DNA from: Podarcis erhardii
Lineage: Eukaryota
Direction: 5' to 3' (one strand)
NCBI GenBank assembly: GCA_964252035.1
Contig: OZ176207.1
Length of the DNA: 64,000 nt
Both the position numbers and the translations under genes were made by a program. Of the stretch, positions 2,187 to 39,065 are shown in pieces; the stretch's first letter is position 1; each line of letters begins with the position of its first letter. Under the pieces are notes generated by a model. The model was not told the origin of the DNA. It searched no databases and worked only from the letters and a program-made list of their open reading frames with translations.

Positions 2187-3056
2187 TTGCGTGGACAGGT
2201 GGAGTCCCCAGATCCCGGGCAGCCCCCCCCCCGTCATGTGGAATAACGACTCTAGACAACGTGCTATGGGATTAAATTGGCCACAACTTTATTAAATTTC
2301 AAATGTGGGTAGACCTTGGCTCAGGCATTGGGCGTTCTCCCTCCCTAGTCCCCAGCCGGGGACCTAGGGAGCTTCAGGGTTATCCAGGGTGGGGGGGGGT
2401 GGAGATGGGCCGGCTCTGGAGAACATATGTTTAAGCAGAGATAGCCGCCCCCGTTACGCCGCCGCAGGGGAGAGCAATGACGACCTTTCGGCGTACGGCC
2501 AAAGCCTCCCTTCAAAAACCCCTTTAACGGGGAACCCTGGTATCGCCGCCGCAAAGAGGAAGATGGACTAAAGGATTCCGCCCAAGGCCTGATACCGCCA
2601 AAGTTGTGACGTTTTGCTACGGGAAAGGCGAAACCTGCCAATGCAGGGAAATTCCTTTCCGGCCCTTTAACAGCGACCTTAACGTAGCAGCGCCCACATA
2701 CTTGTGAAGAAAGGTTAACCTGCAAAACCTGTGAAGAAAAGTTAACCTGCAAAAGAAGAAATTAACTGAGGGTGGGTAGGGTGGGAGAAGCTCTGGAGCC
2801 AAGTGAGGATTAACAATTAAGATCCACCCTCTATTGTGTGGGCAGGTAATCCCTCCCCTTACCTGGCCTGGTTTCCCTGGCAACACTTCCCCCAGGTGGG
2901 ATTGGACAACTCGCTGGGGTAGGCGGGGACCTCCAGGTATCCCACCTGGGGGAAGGCAAAGCCTATGCTGATGGGGCCACTCCAGATCCAGGGCTGCACG
3001 CGTCCACGCAAAAGGCGCCCCCCGTTTTAAGTGGGGAGCGGTCATTGTATCCTTTG
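2187..3056 (-). mobile_element. Putative non-autonomous, ORF-less YR (Ngaro/DIRS-related) element
   Basis: Termini ttg|cgtgg and cctttg parallel the ttg|cgtgt and gctttg termini of the large element. It shares AATAAAGTTGTGGCC and several helices with the Ngaro spacer/B2, and it is a GC-rich island in AT-rich flanks. The boundaries are inferred. Confidence 0.65.
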
Positions 3057-22157: not shown

Positions 22158-22630
22158 TGTTCCTCTTCTTCCGGCTCTTTTCACTTTTCTCCTCTGATCA
22201 ACATGATTCTGTCAATTTGGAAGTGGGTGGAGGAATGAATCATGCATTACAAATGGGTATTTCTCAAAACTGCCAGAGAGACTTATTTAAGAGGTAAAGC
22301 TGCTTTCTTGCATCATATACATCAGGGATAAGGATACTATGGCACTCCTGGTATTGTTGGATCCCTACTCCCATCATCTCCCATTTTGGCTGGGACTGGA
22401 ATCAGAGTTAGTTATGGGGAAGGAATTTGATTCACTTTGCATTAAAATGCAAACTTACAGACTGTGCACTTTCTGAAACGGTACACAAACCAAAACAGAC
22501 ATTCTTCAAAATTCACATTTCTCTGAATTTTGTAATGCAGTTCTCCAGCCAAGTAATGGGGACAAAAAAAATGCATATATTAAGTGTGCCTATAAATGCA
22601 TGCATTAGTGAAAATAATATACAAAATGCA

Positions 22631-23935
22631 TTCTTGGGCAAGGTGATTGAGCGGGTGGTTGCTGAACAACTCCAAGCACGCCTGGAGGAAACGGACCATT
22701 TGGATCCCTTCCAATCGGGATTCAGGCCTCACCATGGGACTGAAACTGCCTTGGTCGCGCTGGTTGATGATCTCCGGCGGGCTAGGGACAAAGGTGAGAG
22801 CTGTTTCCTAGTTCTGCTGGATCTCTCAGCGGCCTTTGACACCATCGACCATAACATCCTTCTGGACCGTCTAGAGGGGCTGGGAGCTGGGGGCACTGTT
22901 ATACAGTGGTTCCGCTCCTTCCTCCTGGGCCGTGTCCAGAAGGTGGTGGTGGGGGGTGAGTGTTCAGACCCCTGGGCTCTCACTTGTGGGGTGCCTCAGG
23001 GTTCTGTCCTCTCCCCCATGCTTTTTAATATCTATATGAAGCCGCTGGGAGAGATCATCAGGGGGTTTGGACTGGGTGTTCATCAGTATGCAGATGACAC
23101 CCAGCTCTACCTCTCCTTTAAATCAGAACCAGTGAAGGCAGTGAAGGTCCTGTGTGAGTGCCTGGAGGCGGTTGGAGGTTGGATGGCGGCTAACAGATAT
23201 AGGTTGAATCCTGACAAGACAGAAGTACTGTTTTTGGGGGGCAGGAGGCGGGCAGGTGTGGAGGATTCCCTGGTCCTGAATGGGGTAATTGTGCCCCTGA
23301 AGGACCAGGTGCGCAGCCTGGGAGTCATTTTGGACTCACAGCTGTCCATGGAGGCGCAGATTAACTCTGTGTCCAGGGCAGCTGTCTACCAGCTCCACCT
23401 GGTACGCAGGCTAAGACCCTACCTCCCCGCGGACTGTCTCGCCAGAGTGGTGCATGCTCTAGTTATCTCACGCTTGGACTACTGCAATGCGCTCTACGTG
23501 GGGCTACCTTTGAAGGTGACCTGGAAACTGCAATTAATCCAGAATGCGGCAGCTAGACTGGTGACTGGGAGTGGCCGCCGGGACCACATAACACCGGTTC
23601 TGAGAGATCTGCATTGGCTCCCAGTACGTTTCCGAGCACGATTCAAAGTGTTGGTGCTGACCTTTAAAGCCCTAAATGGCCTCGGTCCTGTATACCTGAA
23701 GGAGCGTCTCCACCCCCATCGTTCAGCCCGGACACTGAGATCCAGCGCCGAGGGCCTTCTGGCGGTTCCCTCATTGCGAGAAGTGAGGCTACAGGGAACC
23801 AGACAGAGGGCCTTCTCGGTAGTGGCGCCCGCCCTGTGGAACGCCCTCCCATCAGATGTCAAAGAGATAAAGAATTACCTGACGTTCAGAAGACATCTTA
23901 AGGCAGCCCTGTTCAGGGATGTTTTTAATATGTAA
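22631..23935 (+). CDS. L2 ORF2 reverse transcriptase (N-terminally truncated)
   Basis: QSGFR, DLSAAFD, GVPQGSVLSP, QYADD, LNPDKTE and SRLDYCN motifs. The first ~68 aa of the ORF-track call 22427-23935 come from unrelated flank. Confidence 0.9.
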   Translation, partial: FLGKVIERVVAEQLQARLEETDHLDPFQSGFRPHHGTETALVALVDDLRRARDKGESCFLVLLDLSAAFDTIDHNILLDRLEGLGAGGTVIQWFRSFLLGRVQKVVVGGECSDPWALTCGVPQGSVLSPMLFNIYMKPLGEIIRGFGLGVHQYADDTQLYLSFKSEPVKAVKVLCECLEAVGGWMAANRYRLNPDKTEVLFLGGRRRAGVEDSLVLNGVIVPLKDQVRSLGVILDSQLSMEAQINSVSRAAVYQLHLVRRLRPYLPADCLARVVHALVISRLDYCNALYVGLPLKVTWKLQLIQNAAARLVTGSGRRDHITPVLRDLHWLPVRFRARFKVLVLTFKALNGLGPVYLKERLHPHRSARTLRSSAEGLLAVPSLREVRLQGTRQRAFSVVAPALWNALPSDVKEIKNYLTFRRHLKAALFRDVFNM

Positions 23936-31451: not shown

Positions 31452-31875
31452 TTGCGTGTTGAGTCCCACAACGCCACCCTCACCAAATAACTCACACTTC
31501 ACACATCATTTTTGTTTAAGGTTTTTGGCATGATTTTGGCCACAACTTTATTAAAATACAAATACGTGAGTGGTTGCTTAGGCATTGGTTATGACTATCT
31601 GTCCTTGCCCAGGGACAGAGCTGGCCTTCCGGATTCCAGCGGAAGCCAGCATGGGAAACAAGTATTGGGTGAGAAAATGAAGCCGGGAATCAGTCTCACA
31701 CCTCTCACCCTCATGTTCCTGTGGGGCTTGCACGGCCCAAGTCCGACTCCGGGGACAAGGACAAAGAATGGCAAGCCCCTGGATTCCTTTAACGGAATTC
31801 CCTTTCCGCACCACCATTGGAGGGGTAGGCACTTACCCCTCAACCAACCAATTTTAACCAATGCCTAACCGCCAA
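31452..31875 (-). repeat. Ngaro split direct repeat B2 (424 bp, 3' end of element)
   Basis: Direct repeat of 32258-32681. Confidence 0.95.
31547..31552 (-). terminator. Polyadenylation signal AATAAA in B2 (identical copy in B1 at 32353-32358)
   Basis: The minus strand reads TTTTAATAAAGTTGTGGCC, followed by GT-rich downstream sequence. Confidence 0.65.
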
Positions 31876-32050
31876 CCTTACAAGTTGTGACTTATTTGCT
31901 ACGCAGTAGGCGAAACCCAAATGGCACCAGCCAATCAGCCAAATGGTAAATTCCTACCAGGCCCCCGCACCAAGGCGGACGACCCCATGACAGGCATAGC
32001 AAGGTCAAGCGAACCAGAAAACCCTACCCATTAAAGGGAGGGCGGGCGGG
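31876..32050 (-). other. Unique 175-bp spacer between A2 and B2 carrying a conserved structured motif
   Basis: Not repeated elsewhere in the large element. 31882-31964 aligns by eye with 2601-2665. Confidence 0.8.
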
Positions 32051-32260
32051 TGATCCGGTGCAGAGGCCAAGAGGACGCCCAGGAGAGGCGACCTGCATAT
32101 ATAGCCTCTGAATCCCTCCTCCCTTAATGGCCACATGCAAATTCACTGGCAACAATTAACCCTTAAAGGGTCTGGCCTTTTCCAACTGCCTGGTCACCGC
32201 AGGGTGGCTTGTATGTCCCAACCGCAACACGTGCTCTCTTTTCATGGAGAACACGCTTTG
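32051..32260 (-). repeat. Ngaro split direct repeat A2 (210 bp)
   Basis: Identical by eye to 38856-39065; overlaps B1 by the TTG at 32258-32260. Confidence 0.95.
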
Positions 32261-32681
32261 CGTGTTGAGTCCCACAACGCCACCCTCACCAAATAACTCA
32301 CACTTCACACATCATTTTTGTTTAAGGTTTTTGGCATGATTTTGGCCACAACTTTATTAAAATACAAATACGTGAGTGGTTGCTTAGGCATTGGTTATGA
32401 CTATCTGTCCTTGCCCAGGGACAGAGCTGGCCTTCCGGATTCCAGCGGAAGCCAGCATGGGAAACAAGTATTGGGTGAGAAAATGAAGCCGGGAATCAGT
32501 CTCACACCTCTCACCCTCATGTTCCTGTGGGGCTTGCACGGCCCAAGTCCGACTCCGGGGACAAGGACAAAGAATGGCAAGCCCCTGGATTCCTTTAACG
32601 GAATTCCCTTTCCGCACCACCATTGGAGGGGTAGGCACTTACCCCTCAACCAACCAATTTTAACCAATGCCTAACCGCCAA
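32258..32681 (-). repeat. Ngaro split direct repeat B1 (424 bp)
   Basis: Direct repeat of 31452-31875 at an offset of 806. The ORF track shows three identical translations at the same offset. Confidence 0.95.
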
Positions 32682-32709
32682 TGGAGCCCTAAGCTCACCG
32701 CCAAACCAC

Positions 32710-33312
32710 TCACGAACCCAGCCAAGACCTCAGCTTGGCAATCACAGCCCCCAGCCATGCCTTATTCCCTAAGGCCGAAAGGTGCACCCCGTCATCCCTG
32801 AAAAGAGATTCATCCCTAGCAAGAAGCTCGGGATGAGAGATCACATCACCTCCCAGTTCAAAAACCTTTTTTGAGACAGCGGCATTGATACGCTTCCTGG
32901 CCCTTTCAATTGCCGTTGGGCAACGACTGCCTCTCCAACCACGTCTTTGCAAAAACTTCGACCAGAAAATTTTTGCTGCCGGCACCATTGCTCGCAGCAC
33001 CTCCAAATCGCCCAGGATTGCAGTACGTAACGAAACACAGCCCATGGAAACCAAGTCGTTCTCCCCCAGCTGCACCACAATGGCCGTGGGCGGCCCTTCA
33101 AAGCCCAACTGCCTCCGCATCAATGGCAGAAACTCTGTCCAAGACATTCCCCTTCTGGACAGCCATGAAACGTGTACGTGATGAGGAAGGCCGAGACCTG
33201 ATCCCAATCCGCGCTGCCTGGCCTCGATGCCGGCCCAATGCACGATGCTGTGCCCCACCATCCAGATACGGACTGCTGCTACACCTGGGATGAACAAATA
33301 AATAAGAATCAT
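32710..33312 (-). CDS. Ngaro ORF4, SGNH/GDSL-like hydrolase (esterase)
   Basis: Block I WMVGHS, block II RRGMSW, block III QLGEND and block V DDGVH are all present. The ATG lies 3 nt after the YR stop, in the same frame. Confidence 0.88.
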   Translation of the reverse strand: MILIYLFIPGVAAVRIWMVGHSIVHWAGIEARQRGLGSGLGLPHHVHVSWLSRRGMSWTEFLPLMRRQLGFEGPPTAIVVQLGENDLVSMGCVSLRTAILGDLEVLRAMVPAAKIFWSKFLQRRGWRGSRCPTAIERARKRINAAVSKKVFELGGDVISHPELLARDESLFRDDGVHLSALGNKAWLGAVIAKLRSWLGS

Positions 33313-33315
33313 ATG

Positions 33316-34286
33316 TTAACGAACATAACCTCTAAAAGCGTCAGATTTCCAGCGACCCAAATTCTTAATTCTGCTGGCAGACAGACCCCAGTGCACTGCC
33401 GTCGTGGCCGCCCCGATCCTAAAAGAATGGGGAGCAAAACCAGTGGCAGAATCACCACAGGCCACGATGGCCTTCCGCATCACCATTGCAAACTGGCGCC
33501 TAGACAGGGGCAACCCATTCTCATGCCTCAACAGCGGACCATCCCCAGGAGCCCGGATGGCCAGGTATTTCCTAACATCCTTGACCGGACAAGGTCCCGC
33601 CCCCCCTGTGGCAGGGAGACGAAGAAGGGCTCCCTTTCCCCTCTGGTCCGTTTTAGAGTTTCTAATCATGAGCCTTAGCTCATTCGGGAACAACAGTGCG
33701 TCCCGAAGTAATAGTCCCCTAGAATGGCCGTGTTTGTGATCCTCCCATACGAGTTCACCAACCCTCAAAGCTCCGAAGAATGCAATAGAGAAGGCTGCGG
33801 AAAAAAGGCGAGCCTCATACCTGGACCAGCAAACCTTTCGCAGTTCTTTTCGCATTTTACACAGCAAATCAAATGATATAGGGTGCCGTGCAGCTGGCAG
33901 AGAAGGACAGAGCCGACCCCACCCCTCCAGGGCCTTACGCACCACGAACTTCTCACAAGGATCCTTGTCAAAATAAGCTTTACAGAAAAAGGCAATGGCA
34001 GCTGCCTGGATCCTTATTGTCTTAGGTGCGCGACCCAACTGAAATAGGTGCGCCAAATATTTTAGCACCTGAGAAGTGGAGGGTGAAGCCAACCTTTTCT
34101 TCCTGGCTGACTTGTGCATAAAAGACCAAAAATCAGTCCAAGCTTTAGTGTATGACCTGAGAGTAGAAGAGGAAATAGAGGCCGCTACTCCCTGAAAAAC
34201 TAATTCCTGCCAAGGCTCCAGAGATGATCCGGGAAATATTCCGGACGTTCCCGAGCCTCTGGAACCAGATGTCTGAACCGCTCCAT
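33316..34286 (-). CDS. Ngaro ORF3, tyrosine recombinase
   Basis: Catalytic set GALRVGE (R), SKTD (K), HSFR (HxxR), GRW and FRGYVR (Y). I translated the frame upstream of the ATG at 34119; it stays open to 34305 and encodes WQELVFQGVAASISSSTLRSYTKAWTDF, which looks like the N-terminal core-binding helices. Confidence 0.93.
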
Positions 34287-36029
34287 CTGAAAACGGGACA
34301 GAGCATCAGCAATTTCGTTAGACACCCCAGGAACAAAACGAGCAGAGAACACTATGTTATAGCGCAAACAGTGTAAAACAAAAGCCCGTAACAAGGCTGA
34401 CACCCTCGGAGAACGGGACGACAGCTTAGCCAGCACATCCACCACCGCCTGGTTATCGGTCCAAAAGCAAACACGTCGGTCCCTGAACTCCTCGACCCAC
34501 AAGTGCACTGCCACTGCAATGGGAAAGAACTCGAGAAAAGTCAGGTCCCGCGTAATGGCTTCCCCTTGCCAATCCGGAGGCCAACGCATGGCACACCATC
34601 TGCCCATCCAATATAGACCAAAACCCAGGGAACCTGCCGCATCTGAATGCACCTGAAAATCGTTATGCAAGTTCAACGTGTCCTGCCATAACGACACCCC
34701 ATTGAAATCCTCCAAAAATTCAAGCCAAATGTTGAGATCAGCCCTCACCTCACTAGAGAGGCGAACACGATGATGTGGGGCCTTCAAACCCACAGTGAGG
34801 CGAGCCAAACGAGAACAAAAGGGGCGACCCGGGGCCACCACCCTACAAGCAAAATTTAGGTGTCCTAATAGCGACTGTAGTTGTAGCAGGGACACCTTCT
34901 TTAACGGGAGTAACTCTCCTATGACTTTCCGCAACGCAATCAGCTTATCCTTTGGCAAGCTGGAAGTTTGGGACACCGTATCCAACAGGATGCCTAGGTA
35001 AGTGAGGCGGGTCGAAGGACCCTCAGTCTTTTCAGCCGCTAATGGCACCCCCAATTCCACCGTAAGGTCCGCGAATGCGCGCAACAACACCGAGCAATTG
35101 TCGGTAGAACAATCCGAAGCCAGTAAAAAATCATCCAAATAATGAGTAACACCGTCCAGCCCGGTTTTCTCTTTGAGGGCCCACTCCAAAAAGGTGCTGA
35201 AAGATTCAAACGCAGCACACGCTACTGAACAGCCCATAGGCATGGCTTTGTCAAAATAATATTTGCCTTCAAACTGGAAACCTAGTAGCCAAAAATCCTC
35301 CGGATGAATAGGCAGTAAACGAAATGCCGACTCAATATCGCATTTTGCCAGCAAAGCAGCCCGGCCAAACTTCCGAATCATCTTGATCGCGTGATCAAGG
35401 GAAGCATACTTTACTGAGCAAAGCTCCGGAGGAATCACATCGTTAACTGATGTACCCCTAGGATGTGATAAATTATGAATCAAACGAAACTCGCCAGGGG
35501 CTTTCTTAGGCACGATACCCAATGGGGATACGTGTAAATTAGGAAATGGAGGGGCAGAATAAGGACCCGCCATCCGATGCAAAGCCACTTCCTTTGTAAT
35601 TTTCCTTTGGGCAATTTCAGGCAATTCACGAACTGATTTCTGATTAGACGGATTCCGAGCCACCGGCGGCATGGCTACCGGGATCCGAAAACCAACAGAA
35701 AAACCTTCACTCAGATAGCGCGCCGCTACCCTATCGGGGTAATGCTGAAGCCACCTCAATAGTGCCGGCAAACAAACAGGAGTAAAGGCCAAGGAAGTCA
35801 GTACACTATTTTGCTGTACCTGAGGTTGAAGGGGCAGGGGGGGCGGACTTGGGGGGTTGCTGAGAACCCCCTCTTCCCCCACGAAAGGGCCGCCGACCAC
35901 TAAAACAAGAGGAAGCAGGGTGCGCTCCGTTGCATTTTTCGCAATTGTGCGCAAATCTACAATATTGACGCTGACAAGAGGCCCTATTAAAATCCCAGCA
36001 TGGCAGGCGACGGCCTGGTTTAAAAGCAA
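34200..36029 (-). CDS. Ngaro ORF2, reverse transcriptase / RNase H
   Basis: RT motifs FRLIHNLS, DIESAFR, MPMG and THYLDD; RNase H motifs SDAAG, LEFFP, TDN and ADALSR. Overlaps the ORF1 3' end by 224 nt in another frame. The true start is unclear. Confidence 0.95.
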   Translation of the reverse strand: MLLNQAVACHAGILIGPLVSVNIVDLRTIAKNATERTLLPLVLVVGGPFVGEEGVLSNPPSPPPLPLQPQVQQNSVLTSLAFTPVCLPALLRWLQHYPDRVAARYLSEGFSVGFRIPVAMPPVARNPSNQKSVRELPEIAQRKITKEVALHRMAGPYSAPPFPNLHVSPLGIVPKKAPGEFRLIHNLSHPRGTSVNDVIPPELCSVKYASLDHAIKMIRKFGRAALLAKCDIESAFRLLPIHPEDFWLLGFQFEGKYYFDKAMPMGCSVACAAFESFSTFLEWALKEKTGLDGVTHYLDDFLLASDCSTDNCSVLLRAFADLTVELGVPLAAEKTEGPSTRLTYLGILLDTVSQTSSLPKDKLIALRKVIGELLPLKKVSLLQLQSLLGHLNFACRVVAPGRPFCSRLARLTVGLKAPHHRVRLSSEVRADLNIWLEFLEDFNGVSLWQDTLNLHNDFQVHSDAAGSLGFGLYWMGRWCAMRWPPDWQGEAITRDLTFLEFFPIAVAVHLWVEEFRDRRVCFWTDNQAVVDVLAKLSSRSPRVSALLRAFVLHCLRYNIVFSARFVPGVSNEIADALSRFQMERFRHLVPEARERPEYFPDHLWSLGRN

Positions 36030-37332
36030 AATTTCTCAACTTCTGCTGCTCAGGTACCTTTTTGTCGATAAGTGGGGCCACATAAGTAGTCCATACGTCA
36101 AGATCCTTACGATCCCAGCGGGCAGAATGAATCTTAGCAGCACGGCGCCTGAAATTCTCATCGTACTTGATCGCCGCTTTCTCACCAGCTTTGGTGAAGG
36201 CGGAGCGCACAATGGATAAATAGACTAACAAATGAAGGGACCTCCGCGGATAAGCTGCCATAACTACGCCAGCGAAGACCTGGAAACCATCGAGCCAACG
36301 CTCGAAAGTCCTATCCACCGCAGCGGCCCCTGAACGTCTTTTGGTAGAAGAGCTACCCTTCTCCTGATCCTCAGAAGGTGGGACTAATTTGAAGATATCA
36401 ATGTAGCGTCCATTTAAAATTCTGGACCGCAATTTTGATGACAAATGAGAGCCTGGTATGATATCCCTGGCCGAGTTGGTTGAGACTTTTACGTCAGGAA
36501 CCAACACGCCATCCCTACATTCCTGGACAGCCCCATACTTCGCCCGATGAGTGTTCGATCTGCGTTCCCAAGCCCATCGTGGGAGCCCAGAGACCGATTC
36601 GCCAAAGCCCCAATAAAGTTCCATGTGGCTACCCTCATCATCTGAGCTAGAGGACGACGTACCCGAAAGAGAGGAAGAAGAGTCGTCCTTCTTCCGCTTC
36701 GCACGTTTTCTAGATGACCTCCTGCGACGACGCTTCCCCCCCAACGACTTCCTGGCGGGGACCGGGAGACTGTCTTCGATAGAGGACTCCGAATCAGGGT
36801 TCCCCTGGGATGGAACTGAAACAGACTGCATAGAGACAACGCGTGAGATGCCAGAACCCGAGGCTACGCCAGCTGGAGGCCGAGTGGGCGTGCGCCGGCA
36901 AGTAGAAACCGCCGGTGGGGCGCTTCTTTCGGAGGCCCGCCTAGAGAGGCGGCTCGACCTCCGAGGCTGGCTCTGTATAACAGGTAAGTCTGGTGACTGG
37001 GATAGCTGGGGGCCCCCAATTAAGCTCCCCGTTGGAGATCCCTCGCTCCCGACTTCGCTAGATGACGGGGAAGCTGGTGAAGACACCAATGCTGAAAACT
37101 GCGGCCTTCCGGAGGTGGATGGTTGGGAAGAACAACGTTGCAAGACGCCGTCCATCTCTGCTGCGAAGCGTGAAAGGGCCGCCGGATCTCCAGCCATGCT
37201 TGCCACTAGAGATTGCACTCTCCCCACTGTTTGGCTGGAGGAGGGTGAGCGAAGCGCCTGAGATGGGCCTCTAATGGGCCGTTTTGAAGCCATGGCTGAA
37301 CTGGAGCGAGGAGCAGCTTTCTTTGGTGCCAT
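35806..37332 (-). CDS. Ngaro ORF1, gag-like protein
   Basis: First ATG at 37332 (MAPKKAAPR). Ser/Pro/Arg-rich N-half, and a C-terminal Cys/His cluster CWDFNRASCQRQYCRFAHNCEKCNGAHPASSC of the kind seen in DIRS/Ngaro ORF1. Confidence 0.85.
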   Translation of the reverse strand: MAPKKAAPRSSSAMASKRPIRGPSQALRSPSSSQTVGRVQSLVASMAGDPAALSRFAAEMDGVLQRCSSQPSTSGRPQFSALVSSPASPSSSEVGSEGSPTGSLIGGPQLSQSPDLPVIQSQPRRSSRLSRRASERSAPPAVSTCRRTPTRPPAGVASGSGISRVVSMQSVSVPSQGNPDSESSIEDSLPVPARKSLGGKRRRRRSSRKRAKRKKDDSSSSLSGTSSSSSDDEGSHMELYWGFGESVSGLPRWAWERRSNTHRAKYGAVQECRDGVLVPDVKVSTNSARDIIPGSHLSSKLRSRILNGRYIDIFKLVPPSEDQEKGSSSTKRRSGAAAVDRTFERWLDGFQVFAGVVMAAYPRRSLHLLVYLSIVRSAFTKAGEKAAIKYDENFRRRAAKIHSARWDRKDLDVWTTYVAPLIDKKVPEQQKLRNFAFKPGRRLPCWDFNRASCQRQYCRFAHNCEKCNGAHPASSCFSGRRPFRGGRGGSQQPPKSAPPAPSTSGTAK

Positions 37333-37577
37333 ACCTGCTAGCAGGAAAGAAATCAAAACCAGTTAAATTTCCAAGAAGCAGCAACGCGGCTAAAAAGCAA
37401 ACAAAATCACACCAGATCACCACTGCTGTGCCTTACCACGCACGGCTGTCCAGCCACTCCTAGCAAGGAACCACAATACAGCAATTAAACCTATGCAGAA
37501 AATGTATGAGCAATGGAAAATCTCTTGGCTAGAAGCAACGATTCAAAACGTAAATAGGTAACAATCAGGCTGTCTGT

Positions 37578-37620
37578 CTATCTATCTATCTAATCTATCT
37601 ATCTAACTATCTATCTATTT
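37578..37620. repeat. (TATC)n microsatellite inside the Ngaro leader
   Basis: Imperfect tetranucleotide run. Confidence 0.85.
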
Positions 37621-37964
37621 AACTAGATCTGGGCTTAACCTGTGAGAAATACTTGTCCACAAGGCCACAGCAGCGCCTGAGCCAACCTAAGAGGCCGCAC
37701 CGCCGGCCCAGAAACAACCAACGGACCAACCAGGCAACTAATAGTCCGCTATCTATGACCAGCCTCAGACAACTAGTAAAATGAAGAGACAATTACTCAA
37801 CATAACCAGCAGGGGGGGTAGCCCCAAACGAAAACAATGGAAGGCGCGGTACCACCCTGGGCCACTGGGGGAGCTCACAGTGAAAGTCACTTGCGATTAT
37901 GCAGCAAATTTACTAAATAAAAGAAGGCCCAAACCGCACTGGGGAAAATCCCCGAGTCACTGTG

Positions 37965-38350
37965 GGCCCGTGCGTGCCGGCGCGAAGCCTGGCAAGCCGC
38001 TCCAGACTCAAACGGGGCCTACAGAAGCCCCAGGACGGCAGGCGCCAACGCACGCGGCCGCGCGATTGCGCGGACCAGCCCCCCGGACCCTGCAGGCCCC
38101 AGCGTGCAGGCGCGAAACCAGACAGGCCTCACCACGCTCCAACGGGGCCTAGAAGCCCCAAAACCACGGGCGCCCACCAGCCGCAACCGCGCGACCACGC
38201 GGACCAGGCCCGAGGTCCCCGCAGGCCCGCACGCGCCGGCGCGCAGCCGGCAGGCCGCCCACCCCACGATGGGGCCCGCAGAAGGCCAAAACGGCAGGCG
38301 ACCCCTCGCCGCCGCCGCGCAACCGCGCGGACTAGGCCCCAGGCGCCGGG
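37965..38350. repeat. Three degenerate ~130-bp CpG-rich tandem units in the Ngaro 5' leader
   Basis: Units start near 37965, 38095 and 38224 (ggccc..gcg.gc.ggcgcg...ggggcc..agaag...gcggac.agg). Confidence 0.7.
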
Positions 38351-38855
38351 GGATGAGAAGCGGCAACGGCCCACGGAGAGGTAACAGGGCCCGGCCCACG
38401 GATAGGGGATCGAAAAATAGGTAAGCGTTCGCCGCAGCGGCGGTGGGGGGGGGGCCGGTTGGTGCTCAGCGGTTACGGAACCGCAATCAACCAAATTGAG
38501 AGGGGGGTAGGCCGCGGCCTGGAAAAGCGGCTGCAAACCCCCCCGCCCCAAAACGCCCTCGGCGCCCCTCGGATCGACCCAAAGAGGGGCCTGAAGGCCG
38601 GGGGAAAGCCTCCCCCGGGCCGGGGGTGGGGGTGGAATCCCCGCTTCCCACCTAGCCTCTTCCGCTTAAATAAACAATAAACAGGGAAGAAAGATAGGGT
38701 AAATAAGAAGAGACGGAGGAGGGGAAGCGAAAGAGTGAAAGGAATTAAGGAGGAAGAAAGGGGAGAAGAAGGGCTTAGGAATTAGGACAAAATATATAAA
38801 AGCAGCAAATAGATATCAGGTTTAGCAATACAACCGGTTCCAGCAGACTGCTCCT

Positions 38856-39065
38856 TGATCCGGTGCAGAGGCCAAGAGGACGCCCAGGAGAGGCGACCTG
38901 CATATATAGCCTCTGAATCCCTCCTCCCTTAATGGCCACATGCAAATTCACTGGCAACAATTAACCCTTAAAGGGTCTGGCCTTTTCCAACTGCCTGGTC
39001 ACCGCAGGGTGGCTTGTATGTCCCAACCGCAACACGTGCTCTCTTTTCATGGAGAACACGCTTTG
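38856..39065 (-). repeat. Ngaro split direct repeat A1 (210 bp, 5' end of element)
   Basis: Identical by eye to 32051-32260. Confidence 0.95.
38902..38908 (-). promoter_or_regulatory. TATA box (TATATAT) in repeat A1; identical copy in A2 at 32097-32103
   Basis: The minus strand reads GAGGCTATATATGCAGG about 45 nt before the end of repeat A. Confidence 0.6.

What the first reader, a model, noticed from the sequence alone, without database searches (positions are those of the whole stretch)
2187..3056. Candidate non-autonomous 'satellite' of a tyrosine-recombinase retrotransposon, with an inverted copy of its own circle junction
Seen: ~870 bp, no credible ORF, and TTG at both ends (2187-2189 and 3054-3056), as in the large element. 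Removing it reconstitutes agttat-ttg-tatgag. Joining its two ends gives cctttg|cgtggac, and the reverse complement of that junction, with one extra A, sits inside the element at 3002-3015 (gtccacgcaaaagg). It also has a perfect 17-bp inverted repeat (2886-2902 / 2939-2955), a TATA-like CTTAAAA near the minus-strand 5' end, and AATAAA at 2293-2288. Established: DIRS1-type elements carry an internal complementary region (ICR) matching both termini, whereas Ngaro elements carry a direct junction copy. Inference: this element combines a Ngaro-like 3' RNA module with an ICR-like design and could be mobilised in trans by RT and YR.
Basis: partly seen in the sequence, partly recalled or inferred. Interest (0 to 1): 0.8.

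Follow-up and report, generated by a model that had tools for sequence, protein, structure and literature searches.

The report
Stand-alone end-piece of a Ngaro retrotransposon
This 870-letter stretch is the non-coding end unit of a tyrosine-recombinase (Ngaro) jumping gene standing alone in a lizard genome, and its "inverted junction copy" is one half of a hairpin that other Ngaro elements also form where their two ends meet.

Summary
The inverted junction copy exceeds chance: 5 of 5000 and 1 of 400 shuffles reach it.

The element is not a Ngaro/DIRS1 hybrid. It matches, in the same order and spacing, the 806-bp A2-U-B2 end unit of the intact Ngaro at 31452-39065. The two share three conserved islands, the end motifs and a TTG at both ends. 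It has no ORF with relatives and no split direct repeats. It is therefore a free-standing A-U-B unit of a second, diverged Ngaro family.

Such units are already described. Solo AB repeats are reported for Cafeteria Ngaros, and SIRE of Trypanosoma VIPER is A2 plus a short unique piece plus B2.

The inverted copy is a family trait. In the neighbouring Ngaro and in at least four distant Ngaro families from metagenomes, the last 7-10 nt of B recur inverted 25-45 nt inside A. This closes a two-tier stem-loop over the circle junction, with compensatory changes between families. Only a 3-6-nt extension across the junction is peculiar to this copy.

I could not test whether the unit is a recombination remnant (my preference, 0.55) or a trans-mobilised satellite (0.3). 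First-stage notes on other DNA of this genome also report solo A-B units.

The parts
2187..3056 (-). Whole unit: a free-standing A-U-B terminal unit of a Ngaro-type retrotransposon. The sense strand is the minus strand.
   Evidence: It matches the order and spacing of 31452-32260 (B2-U-A2 of the large Ngaro). GC is 0.555 and CpG o/e 0.57, against flanks at 0.05-0.22.
2187..2189 (.). TTG core at the B (3') terminus
   Evidence: The large Ngaro has TTG at 31452-31454 and 39063-39065, and a single TTG at its internal B1|A2 junction 32258-32260.
3054..3056 (.). TTG core at the A (5') terminus
   Evidence: The end motif CTTTG is shared with the large element.
2187..2207 (-). B-terminal arm (TTGCGTGGAC...), one half of the outer stem of the circle-junction stem-loop
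   Evidence: 22-nt, 82% inverted repeat with 2991-3012. The joined ends fold with z = -6.4 (RNA) and -3.6 (DNA).
3002..3015 (-).
   Evidence: The equivalent arm in the large Ngaro is near 32217-32230, and equivalents occur in L067, L062, L072 and L074.
3016..3040 (-). Inner hairpin between the junction and the A arm (8-bp stem).
   Evidence: A nested inner hairpin at the same place appears in all Ngaro junctions folded.
2886..2955 (-). Perfect 17-bp inverted repeat with a 36-nt loop inside the A-equivalent. Role unknown.
2873..2893 (-). Conserved island 1 (A region), ...TGTTGCCAG.GAA
   Evidence: It matches 32142-32162. It lies 686 nt from the B terminus here and 690 nt in the large element.
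2599..2635 (-). Conserved island 2 (U region), GGTTTCGCC...CGTAGCAAA..GTCACAACTT
   Evidence: It matches 31880-31917. It pairs with island 3 in the centroid folds.
2267..2307 (-). Conserved island 3 (B region), holding the AATAAA signal (2293-2288) and AAAGTTGTGGCC
   Evidence: It matches 31526-31566. It lies 80 nt from the B terminus here and 74 nt in the large element.
2321..2334 (-). 3' half of a long-range helix that closes the structured RNA module
   Evidence: 14-nt, 93% inverted repeat with 2579-2592. The large element keeps the same helix with compensatory changes.
2579..2592 (-). 5' half of that long-range helix
2700..2753 (-). 27-bp tandem duplication inside the U-equivalent
   Evidence: D1, 93% identity.
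31452..39065 (-). Comparator, not part of the unit: an intact Ngaro. B2 31452-31875, U 31876-32050, A2 32051-32260, B1 32258-32681, A1 38856-39065. ORFs are gag-like, RT, YR and GDSL/SGNH hydrolase.

Best explanation
The 870 bp are a free-standing A-U-B terminal unit of a Ngaro-type tyrosine-recombinase retrotransposon. The family differs from, and is much diverged from, the intact Ngaro 29 kb away.

In sense (minus-strand) order the unit holds:
- A, with the inner hairpin and the arm complementary to the B terminus, plus whatever promoter the family uses.
- U and the first part of B, which form a structured RNA domain closed by a long-range helix just before the AATAAA signal.
- The last ~80 nt of B, ending in ...GTCCACGCAA.

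Most likely history. A full-length element (A1-ORFs-B1-A2-U-B2) was inserted by its recombinase at a host TTG. The crossover occurred in a 3-nt core that the circle junction and the target share. Recombination between A1 and A2 then removed the coding body and B1, leaving A-U-B2 between the two TTGs. This is the Ngaro analogue of a solo LTR.

The 'inverted junction copy' is the A-side half of a stem-loop that forms only when B-end and A-start are joined, as in a circle or at B1|A2. I infer that this stem-loop is the recombinase or replication signal of Ngaro elements.

What is shown: the homology, the anatomy, the TTG core and the conserved stem-loop. What is inferred: the deletion history and the role of the stem-loop.
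For: 1. Homology and matching layout. BLAST hits of the unit to the window fall only in the large Ngaro's terminal unit, on the same strand (E = 6e-7 and 1e-3). Three conserved islands lie at almost the same distance from the B terminus in both elements: 80/74, 412/428 and 686/690 nt. The end motifs TTGCGTG... and ...CTTTG are shared.

2. The large element's end unit B2 (424 bp) + U (175 bp) + A2 (210 bp) is 806 bp start to start (809 bp counting the junction TTG), against 870 bp here.

3. There are no split direct repeats inside the unit; the longest direct repeat is 27 nt. No ORF has relatives.

4. TTG is a crossover core, not a repair duplication. The large element's internal B1|A2 junction carries exactly one TTG. 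This is as described for the DIRS group, where a trinucleotide sits at the circle junction and at both ends (PMC7192593).

5. The long-range helices of the RNA module are kept with compensatory changes: GGGCG/CGCCC here against GGUUA/UAACC in the large element. The unit therefore descends from a lineage under selection.

6. Precedent. Solo AB repeats of Ngaro are attributed to recombination of the 5' and 3' repeats (PMC8547959).

7. CpG o/e is 0.57, like the very young neighbour's unit (0.51) and unlike the background (0.05-0.27). The unit is young.
Against: - No full-length relative of this family was found; only one 64-kb window could be searched.
- Outside the three islands the two units are barely alignable (46-51% identity).
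- SIRE of T. cruzi has the same A2-unique-B2 anatomy, and whether it is mobile is still debated (PMC6681497). A remnant origin is therefore not the only reading of this anatomy.
- The extra 3-6 nt of complementarity across the junction is not seen in the other families and is unexplained.
Confidence: 0.55

Rival explanations
1. SIRE-like satellite. The A-U-B unit is itself mobile. One route is an A-U-B minicircle, made as a by-product of cDNA recombination between B2' and B1 or cut out by the recombinase, then integrated at TTG by a Ngaro recombinase supplied in trans. The other route is a short A-to-B transcript that carries the 3' RNA module and is copied by a Ngaro RT in trans.
For: - The unit keeps both halves of the junction stem-loop, the TTG core, the structured 3' RNA module and AATAAA.
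- Both ends are precise.
- Its high CpG content suggests recent arrival.
- SIRE equals A2 + exclusive ~30 bp + B2 of VIPER, and its mobility is an open question (PMC6681497).
- All ten Ngaro loci with a B1-A2-B2 region that I inspected carry a unique U between A2 and B2. A-U-B is therefore a self-contained module in every element.
- An intact Ngaro with RT and YR ORFs lies in the same window.
Against: - The unit has no terminal redundancy (A1...B1A2B2). An RNA running from a promoter in A to the poly(A) site in B would lack both termini.
- The position that aligns with the neighbour's TATATAT reads CAATAGAG here.
- The helper in this window belongs to a different family, with different arm sequences (GTCCACG against CAACACG).
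- There are no copy-number data.
Confidence: 0.3
2. This is a new hybrid design in which a DIRS1-type internal complementary region (ICR) replaces the Ngaro direct junction copy and restores both ends of a sub-genomic cDNA by acting as a splint.
For: The geometry is that of an ICR. On the + strand the internal segment 3002-3015 is complementary to the last 6 nt and to the first 7-10 nt of the element, side by side. It exceeds chance. The extension across the junction (AGG/CCT...) is not seen in the other families.
Against: - The same arm exists in autonomous Ngaros that also carry the direct junction copy. These are the large element here and L067, L062, L072 and L074. It is not a substitute for that copy.
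- There are no long ITRs.
- 6 + 7-10 nt compares poorly with 33 + 55 nt in DIRS-1 (PMC7192593).
- If transcription starts downstream of the arm, as the neighbour's TATA position suggests, the arm is not in the RNA at all.
Confidence: 0.07
3. An inert fragment. The stretch is a truncated or rearranged piece of a dead Ngaro 3' region, and the TTG pair and the inverted match are coincidental.
For: TTG is only 3 nt. The right boundary could not be checked against an empty site. No paralogous empty site exists in the window.
Against: - Both ends coincide with the end motifs of the large element (TTGCGTG... and ...CTTTG).
- The unit spans exactly A-U-B, with islands at matching distances.
- The inverted match is improbable by chance.
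- The CpG-rich composition continues to at least 3040 and then drops.
Confidence: 0.08

Closest known systems
Solo AB repeats of Ngaro retrotransposons in Cafeteria burkhardae (Hackl et al. 2021, PMC8547959)
   Same: Isolated A+B repeat units without ORFs, scattered in the genome. They are interpreted as products of recombination between the 5' and 3' repeats, like solo LTRs.
   Different: The host is a vertebrate (lizard) and the family carries an SGNH-hydrolase. Here the unit visibly includes a unique U segment between A and B and both halves of a junction stem-loop. The parent full-length family was not found.
SIRE, the short interspersed element derived from VIPER in Trypanosoma cruzi (Vazquez et al. 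1999/2000, as re-analysed in PMC6681497)
   Same: The anatomy is the same: the 5' repeat of a tyrosine-recombinase retrotransposon, a short exclusive internal region, and the 3' repeat (A2 plus B2). The open question is also the same: mobile with help, or remnant.
   Different: VIPER is a different clade. SIRE is known to be highly repeated, whereas the copy number here is unknown.
DIRS-1 internal complementary region (Cappello et al. 1985; Malicki et al. 2020, PMC7192593)
   Same: An internal segment complementary to both extremities, side by side. A trinucleotide sits at the circle junction and at both ends of integrated copies.
   Different: The DIRS-1 ICR is 88 nt (33 + 55) and comes with long inverted terminal repeats; it was shown experimentally to be essential. 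Here the complementarity is 13-14 nt, there are no ITRs, and the same arm coexists with the direct junction copy in autonomous Ngaros.
Folded single-strand recombination sites of bacterial tyrosine recombinases (integron attC, CTX phage attP). This comparison rests on my own knowledge and was not tested.
   Same: A hairpin brings together two imperfectly complementary arms, with the crossover at the base of the stem. DIRS-1 cDNA is single-stranded (PMC7192593).
   Different: There is no evidence that Ngaro recombinases act on single strands. This is an analogy of mechanism, not membership.

Membership tests
Ngaro terminal unit (solo A-U-B) | Sequence homology, in the same order, to A2-(U)-B2 of a bona fide Ngaro | tested here: met
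   Three islands lie in order at 80/74, 412/428 and 686/690 nt from the B terminus, and the end motifs are the same.
Ngaro terminal unit (solo A-U-B) | The same terminal trinucleotide at both ends as at the family's circle junction | tested here: met
   TTG is at 2187-2189 and 3054-3056. The large Ngaro has TTG at both ends and one TTG at B1|A2.
Ngaro terminal unit (solo A-U-B) | One A and one B only, with no coding body | tested here: met
   No direct repeat longer than 27 nt. ORFs have no family or relatives.
Ngaro terminal unit (solo A-U-B) | A full-length element of the same family (same A and B) exists in the genome | not testable with these tools
Complete Ngaro retrotransposon | Split direct repeats A1-[ORFs]-B1-A2-B2, with RT/RNase H and YR genes | tested here: not met
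   The neighbour at 31452-39065 does meet it.
DIRS1-like element | Long inverted terminal repeats | tested here: not met
   The only candidate is a 22-nt, 82% inverted repeat, whose right arm lies 44 nt inside the end.
DIRS1-like element | ICR complementary to both extremities, adjacent to each other | tested here: inconclusive
   A 13-14-nt version is present. It is shared with autonomous Ngaros and is far shorter than the 88-nt ICR of DIRS-1.
Non-autonomous, trans-mobilised retroelement (SIRE-like) | Many copies with precise ends and unrelated flanks, outnumbering or lacking a matching autonomous parent | not testable with these tools
   No genome-wide search was available. The window holds a single copy.
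Non-autonomous, trans-mobilised retroelement (SIRE-like) | A device that regenerates the ends from a sub-genomic RNA | tested here: inconclusive
   There is no terminal redundancy. The short inverted arm might serve, but its presence in the RNA is unknown.

The most novel reading that the evidence does not exclude
Ngaro elements in general carry a miniature ICR equivalent. This is a two-tier stem-loop across the circle junction, whose outer stem pairs the B terminus with an arm 25-45 nt inside A. A lone A-U-B unit that keeps both halves plus the 3' RNA module would then be a vertebrate SIRE-like satellite, able to circularise and be re-inserted at TTG by a Ngaro recombinase acting in trans, possibly on folded single-stranded DNA.
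Probability: 0.15. Interest if true: 0.7.

Novelty: new member of a known kind. Interest (0 to 1): 0.4.

Why it matters
As an object it is ordinary. It is a solo or SIRE-like end unit of a Ngaro, a kind already reported in a protist and in trypanosomes, now seen in a lizard.

Its value lies in what the comparison exposed.
- The inverted copy of the B terminus inside A, and the nested hairpin beside it, recur with compensatory changes. They appear in an unidentified eukaryote's Ngaro families from metagenomes and in two diverged lizard families.
- This gives a concrete, testable candidate for the recognition site of these uncharacterised eukaryotic tyrosine recombinases.
- It also suggests that split-direct-repeat elements and DIRS1-type ICR elements use the same principle at the junction.
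- Every split-direct-repeat region I inspected has a unique segment between A2 and B2. This bears on how these elements are copied.

Tried and rejected
There is therefore no depth, no empty-site allele and no RNA evidence.
Lacertid Ngaro loci found through the YR protein search (best identity 72%, Podarcis, Lacerta, Zootoca) could not be fetched.
- A protein-word search with the spurious 135-aa ORF, meant to fish out other copies, found nothing.
- Exact search for the 20-nt conserved island found nothing in viral contigs or genome contigs.
- Rfam at gathering threshold found no family in the window.
- The joined flanks have no paralogous empty site in the window.
- blastn of the unit against the 80 metagenome Ngaro loci found no nucleotide similarity. 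No solo units turned up in those loci.
- The search of earlier findings by sequence was blank.
- Goodwin & Poulter 2004 and Poulter & Butler 2015 are not held. I cannot say whether the junction stem-loop was already described there. Searches for Ngaro with hairpin or stem-loop found nothing relevant.
- Rejected: the CTTAAAA as a TATA box, because it sits in a hairpin loop 24-32 nt from the end.
- Rejected: an alternative right end at 3012, because CpG-rich element-like sequence continues to 3040.

Full report
**1. Observation.**
- TTG lies at 2187-2189 and 3054-3056, and the flanks would rejoin as agttat-ttg-tatgag.
- gtccacgcaaaagg lies at 3002-3015. It is the reverse complement of the joined ends (cctttg|cgtggac) with one extra A.
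- tttatt lies at 2288-2293, which is AATAAA on the minus strand.
- The perfect 17-bp inverted repeat is at 2886-2902 / 2939-2955. A 22-nt, 82% inverted repeat joins the left terminus (2186-2207) to a subterminal right segment (2991-3012).
- The junction match is not chance. Five of 5000 dinucleotide-preserving shuffles hold the 13-mer with at most one error. One of 400 holds any junction-spanning inverted match of 13 nt or more.
- The two mechanical minus-strand ORFs (135 and 150 aa) have no Pfam family. The 135-aa one has no relative in the word search.
- The stretch is GC-rich (0.555) with CpG o/e 0.57. The flanks have CpG o/e 0.05-0.22.

**2. The comparator in the window.**
The 'large element' is an intact Ngaro on the minus strand at 31452-39065.
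- Its ORFs are a gag-like ORF, RT (RVT_1), a tyrosine recombinase (Phage_integrase) and a GDSL/SGNH hydrolase.
- Its repeats are 100% identical. B is 424 bp (31452-31875 = 32258-32681). A is 210 bp (32051-32260 = 38856-39065). A 175-bp segment U (31876-32050) lies between A2 and B2 and occurs only once.
- It is flanked gatcctg|TTG...TTG|tagggtg, and its internal B1|A2 junction carries a single TTG.
- TTG therefore belongs to the circle junction and acts as a crossover core, not as a repair-made target-site duplication. The literature says the same for the DIRS group: a trinucleotide at the circle junction ends up at both ends of a new insertion (PMC7192593).

**3. What the 870 bp are.**
Within the window the unit matches only the terminal unit of that Ngaro, on the same strand.
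- Globally the two are barely alignable (46-51% identity).
- Three islands of 21, 38 and 41 nt are conserved in the same order. They sit at nearly identical distances from the B terminus: 80 vs 74, 412 vs 428 and 686 vs 690 nt.
- The termini share TTGCGTG... and ...CTTTG.
- The Ngaro's B2-U-A2 unit measures 806 bp and this one 870 bp. The extra ~65 nt lie at the outer end of A.
- The unit has no internal repeats that could be A1/A2 or B1/B2.
- It is thus one A, one U and one B of a second, diverged Ngaro family.
- Islands 2 and 3 pair with each other in the centroid folds of both elements. A second long-range helix is kept through compensatory changes: UCAGGCCUUGGGCG/CGCCCAAUGCCUGA here and UUAGGCAUUGGUUA/UAACCAAUGCCUAA there.
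It shows that the unit comes from a lineage that evolved under selection.

**4. The 'inverted junction copy' is a Ngaro trait.**
I fetched 80 metagenome contigs that encode relatives of the recombinase and delimited their repeats by self-comparison.
- Five hold complete A1...B1-A2-B2 elements, and five more hold B1-A2-B2.
- All ten have a unique segment of 61-208 bp or more between A2 and B2.
- In four distinct families the last 7-10 nt of B recur inverted about 29-32 nt inside A: L067 GTAATTAA, L062 ATGTCATTAA, L074 ATAATTA and L072 CCTATTAA. Between 0 and 41 of 2000 shuffles reach these matches.
- The large lizard element has the same feature at 27-41 nt, and the small one at 43-52 nt (GTCCACGCAA, 1 of 2000 shuffles).
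- Folding 25 nt of B plus 70 nt of A gives the same two-tier stem-loop in the four metagenome families and both lizard elements (weaker in L063, absent in L079). The outer stem is the B terminus paired with the A arm, the junction sits at its top, and a nested inner hairpin lies in the first 30-40 nt of A. The z-scores are -2.6 to -6.4 for these six. They are weaker for L063 and L079, whose arms are only 5 nt.
- An alignment of seven metagenome junctions gives 15 consensus pairs, six of them with compensatory double changes.
- The two lizard families also differ in a compensatory way: CGTGGAC/GTCCACG against CGTGTTG/CAACACG.
It is not a DIRS1-style replacement for that copy.
- What is peculiar to this copy is only that the stem runs 3-6 nt across the junction (AGG/CCT...).
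The neighbour's real TATATAT aligns with CAATAGAG here.

**5. How it most likely arose and works.**
- Shown: the anatomy, the homology, the TTG core and the conserved stem-loop.
- Inferred: a full-length element of this family integrated at a host TTG. A1 x A2 recombination then removed the ORFs and B1 and left A-U-B2.
- Solo AB repeats were explained in this way in Cafeteria (PMC8547959).
- The high CpG content suggests that the unit is young.
- A lone unit cannot regenerate its ends from a promoter-to-poly(A) RNA, because it lacks the B1|A2 copy.

**6. The rival readings.**
- The same anatomy (A2 + exclusive short region + B2) defines SIRE, the short interspersed element of Trypanosoma cruzi derived from VIPER. 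Whether SIRE moves with help or is a remnant is still open (PMC6681497).
- An A-U-B minicircle could arise from cDNA by recombination between the partial B2 and B1, or by recombinase action, and then be integrated at TTG.
- The unit keeps both stem halves, the core and the 3' RNA module.

**7. What could not be done.**
- Copy number, empty sites, the parent family and expression therefore remain untested.
- The founding Ngaro papers are not in the held library. I cannot exclude that the junction stem-loop was described there. Full-text searches found nothing.
- First-stage notes on other DNA of this genome report solo A-B units (s1-268929, s1-234776), a miniature A1-X-B1-A2-B2 element (s1-232458), and a TTG crossover with inverted arms at other Ngaro copies (s1-217738, s1-232465, s1-259168). 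These are unverified leads. They agree with this reading but are not independent evidence.

**8. Verdict.**
The object is a new member of a known kind: a solo AB or SIRE-like unit of a tyrosine-recombinase retrotransposon. The by-product, a conserved and covarying junction stem-loop with a universal U segment in Ngaro elements, is the part worth following up.

Noticed in passing
L062-L064, L067, L068, L072, L074, L078-L080; window 32217-32269: Ngaro circle junctions (B1|A2) fold into a conserved two-tier stem-loop. The outer stem pairs the B terminus with an arm 25-45 nt inside A, and a nested hairpin sits between them. 6 of 15 consensus pairs show compensatory changes across metagenome families. 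This is a candidate recombinase or replication signal.
   Followed up: partly
window 31876-32050; L063 11502-11586; L067 11704-11764; L080 11668-11875: Every split-direct-repeat region I inspected has a unique segment (U, 61-208 bp) between A2 and B2. It is absent next to A1 or B1. The usual A1-B1A2B2 scheme does not show it. It corresponds to the 'exclusive ~30 bp' of SIRE and holds one strand of the helix that closes the 3' RNA module.
   Followed up: partly
window 31452-39065: An intact Ngaro with gag-like, RT, YR and GDSL/SGNH-hydrolase ORFs and 100% identical A and B repeats, so it is very young. Its target reads ctg-TTG-tag, and the small unit's target reads tat-TTG-tat. Both are TTG followed by TA.
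   Followed up: partly
window 37950-38250: About 129-bp GC-rich tandem units (75-78% identity) lie in the 5' untranslated region of the large Ngaro, upstream of the gag-like ORF.
   Followed up: no
window 22427-23935: A 502-aa ORF on the + strand has a strong reverse-transcriptase match (RVT_1, E = 1e-32). It is a different retroelement, probably a LINE, and is unrelated to the Ngaro.
   Followed up: no
window 2886-2955: A perfect 17-bp inverted repeat with a 36-nt loop lies inside the A-equivalent of the small unit. It has no counterpart at the aligned place in the large element. Its role is unknown.
   Followed up: no
L068 5538-6008 and 12006-12524: In one metagenome contig the Ngaro element is bordered on both sides by short tandem repeats (276-bp and 52-bp periods) that start exactly at the element ends.
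   Followed up: no
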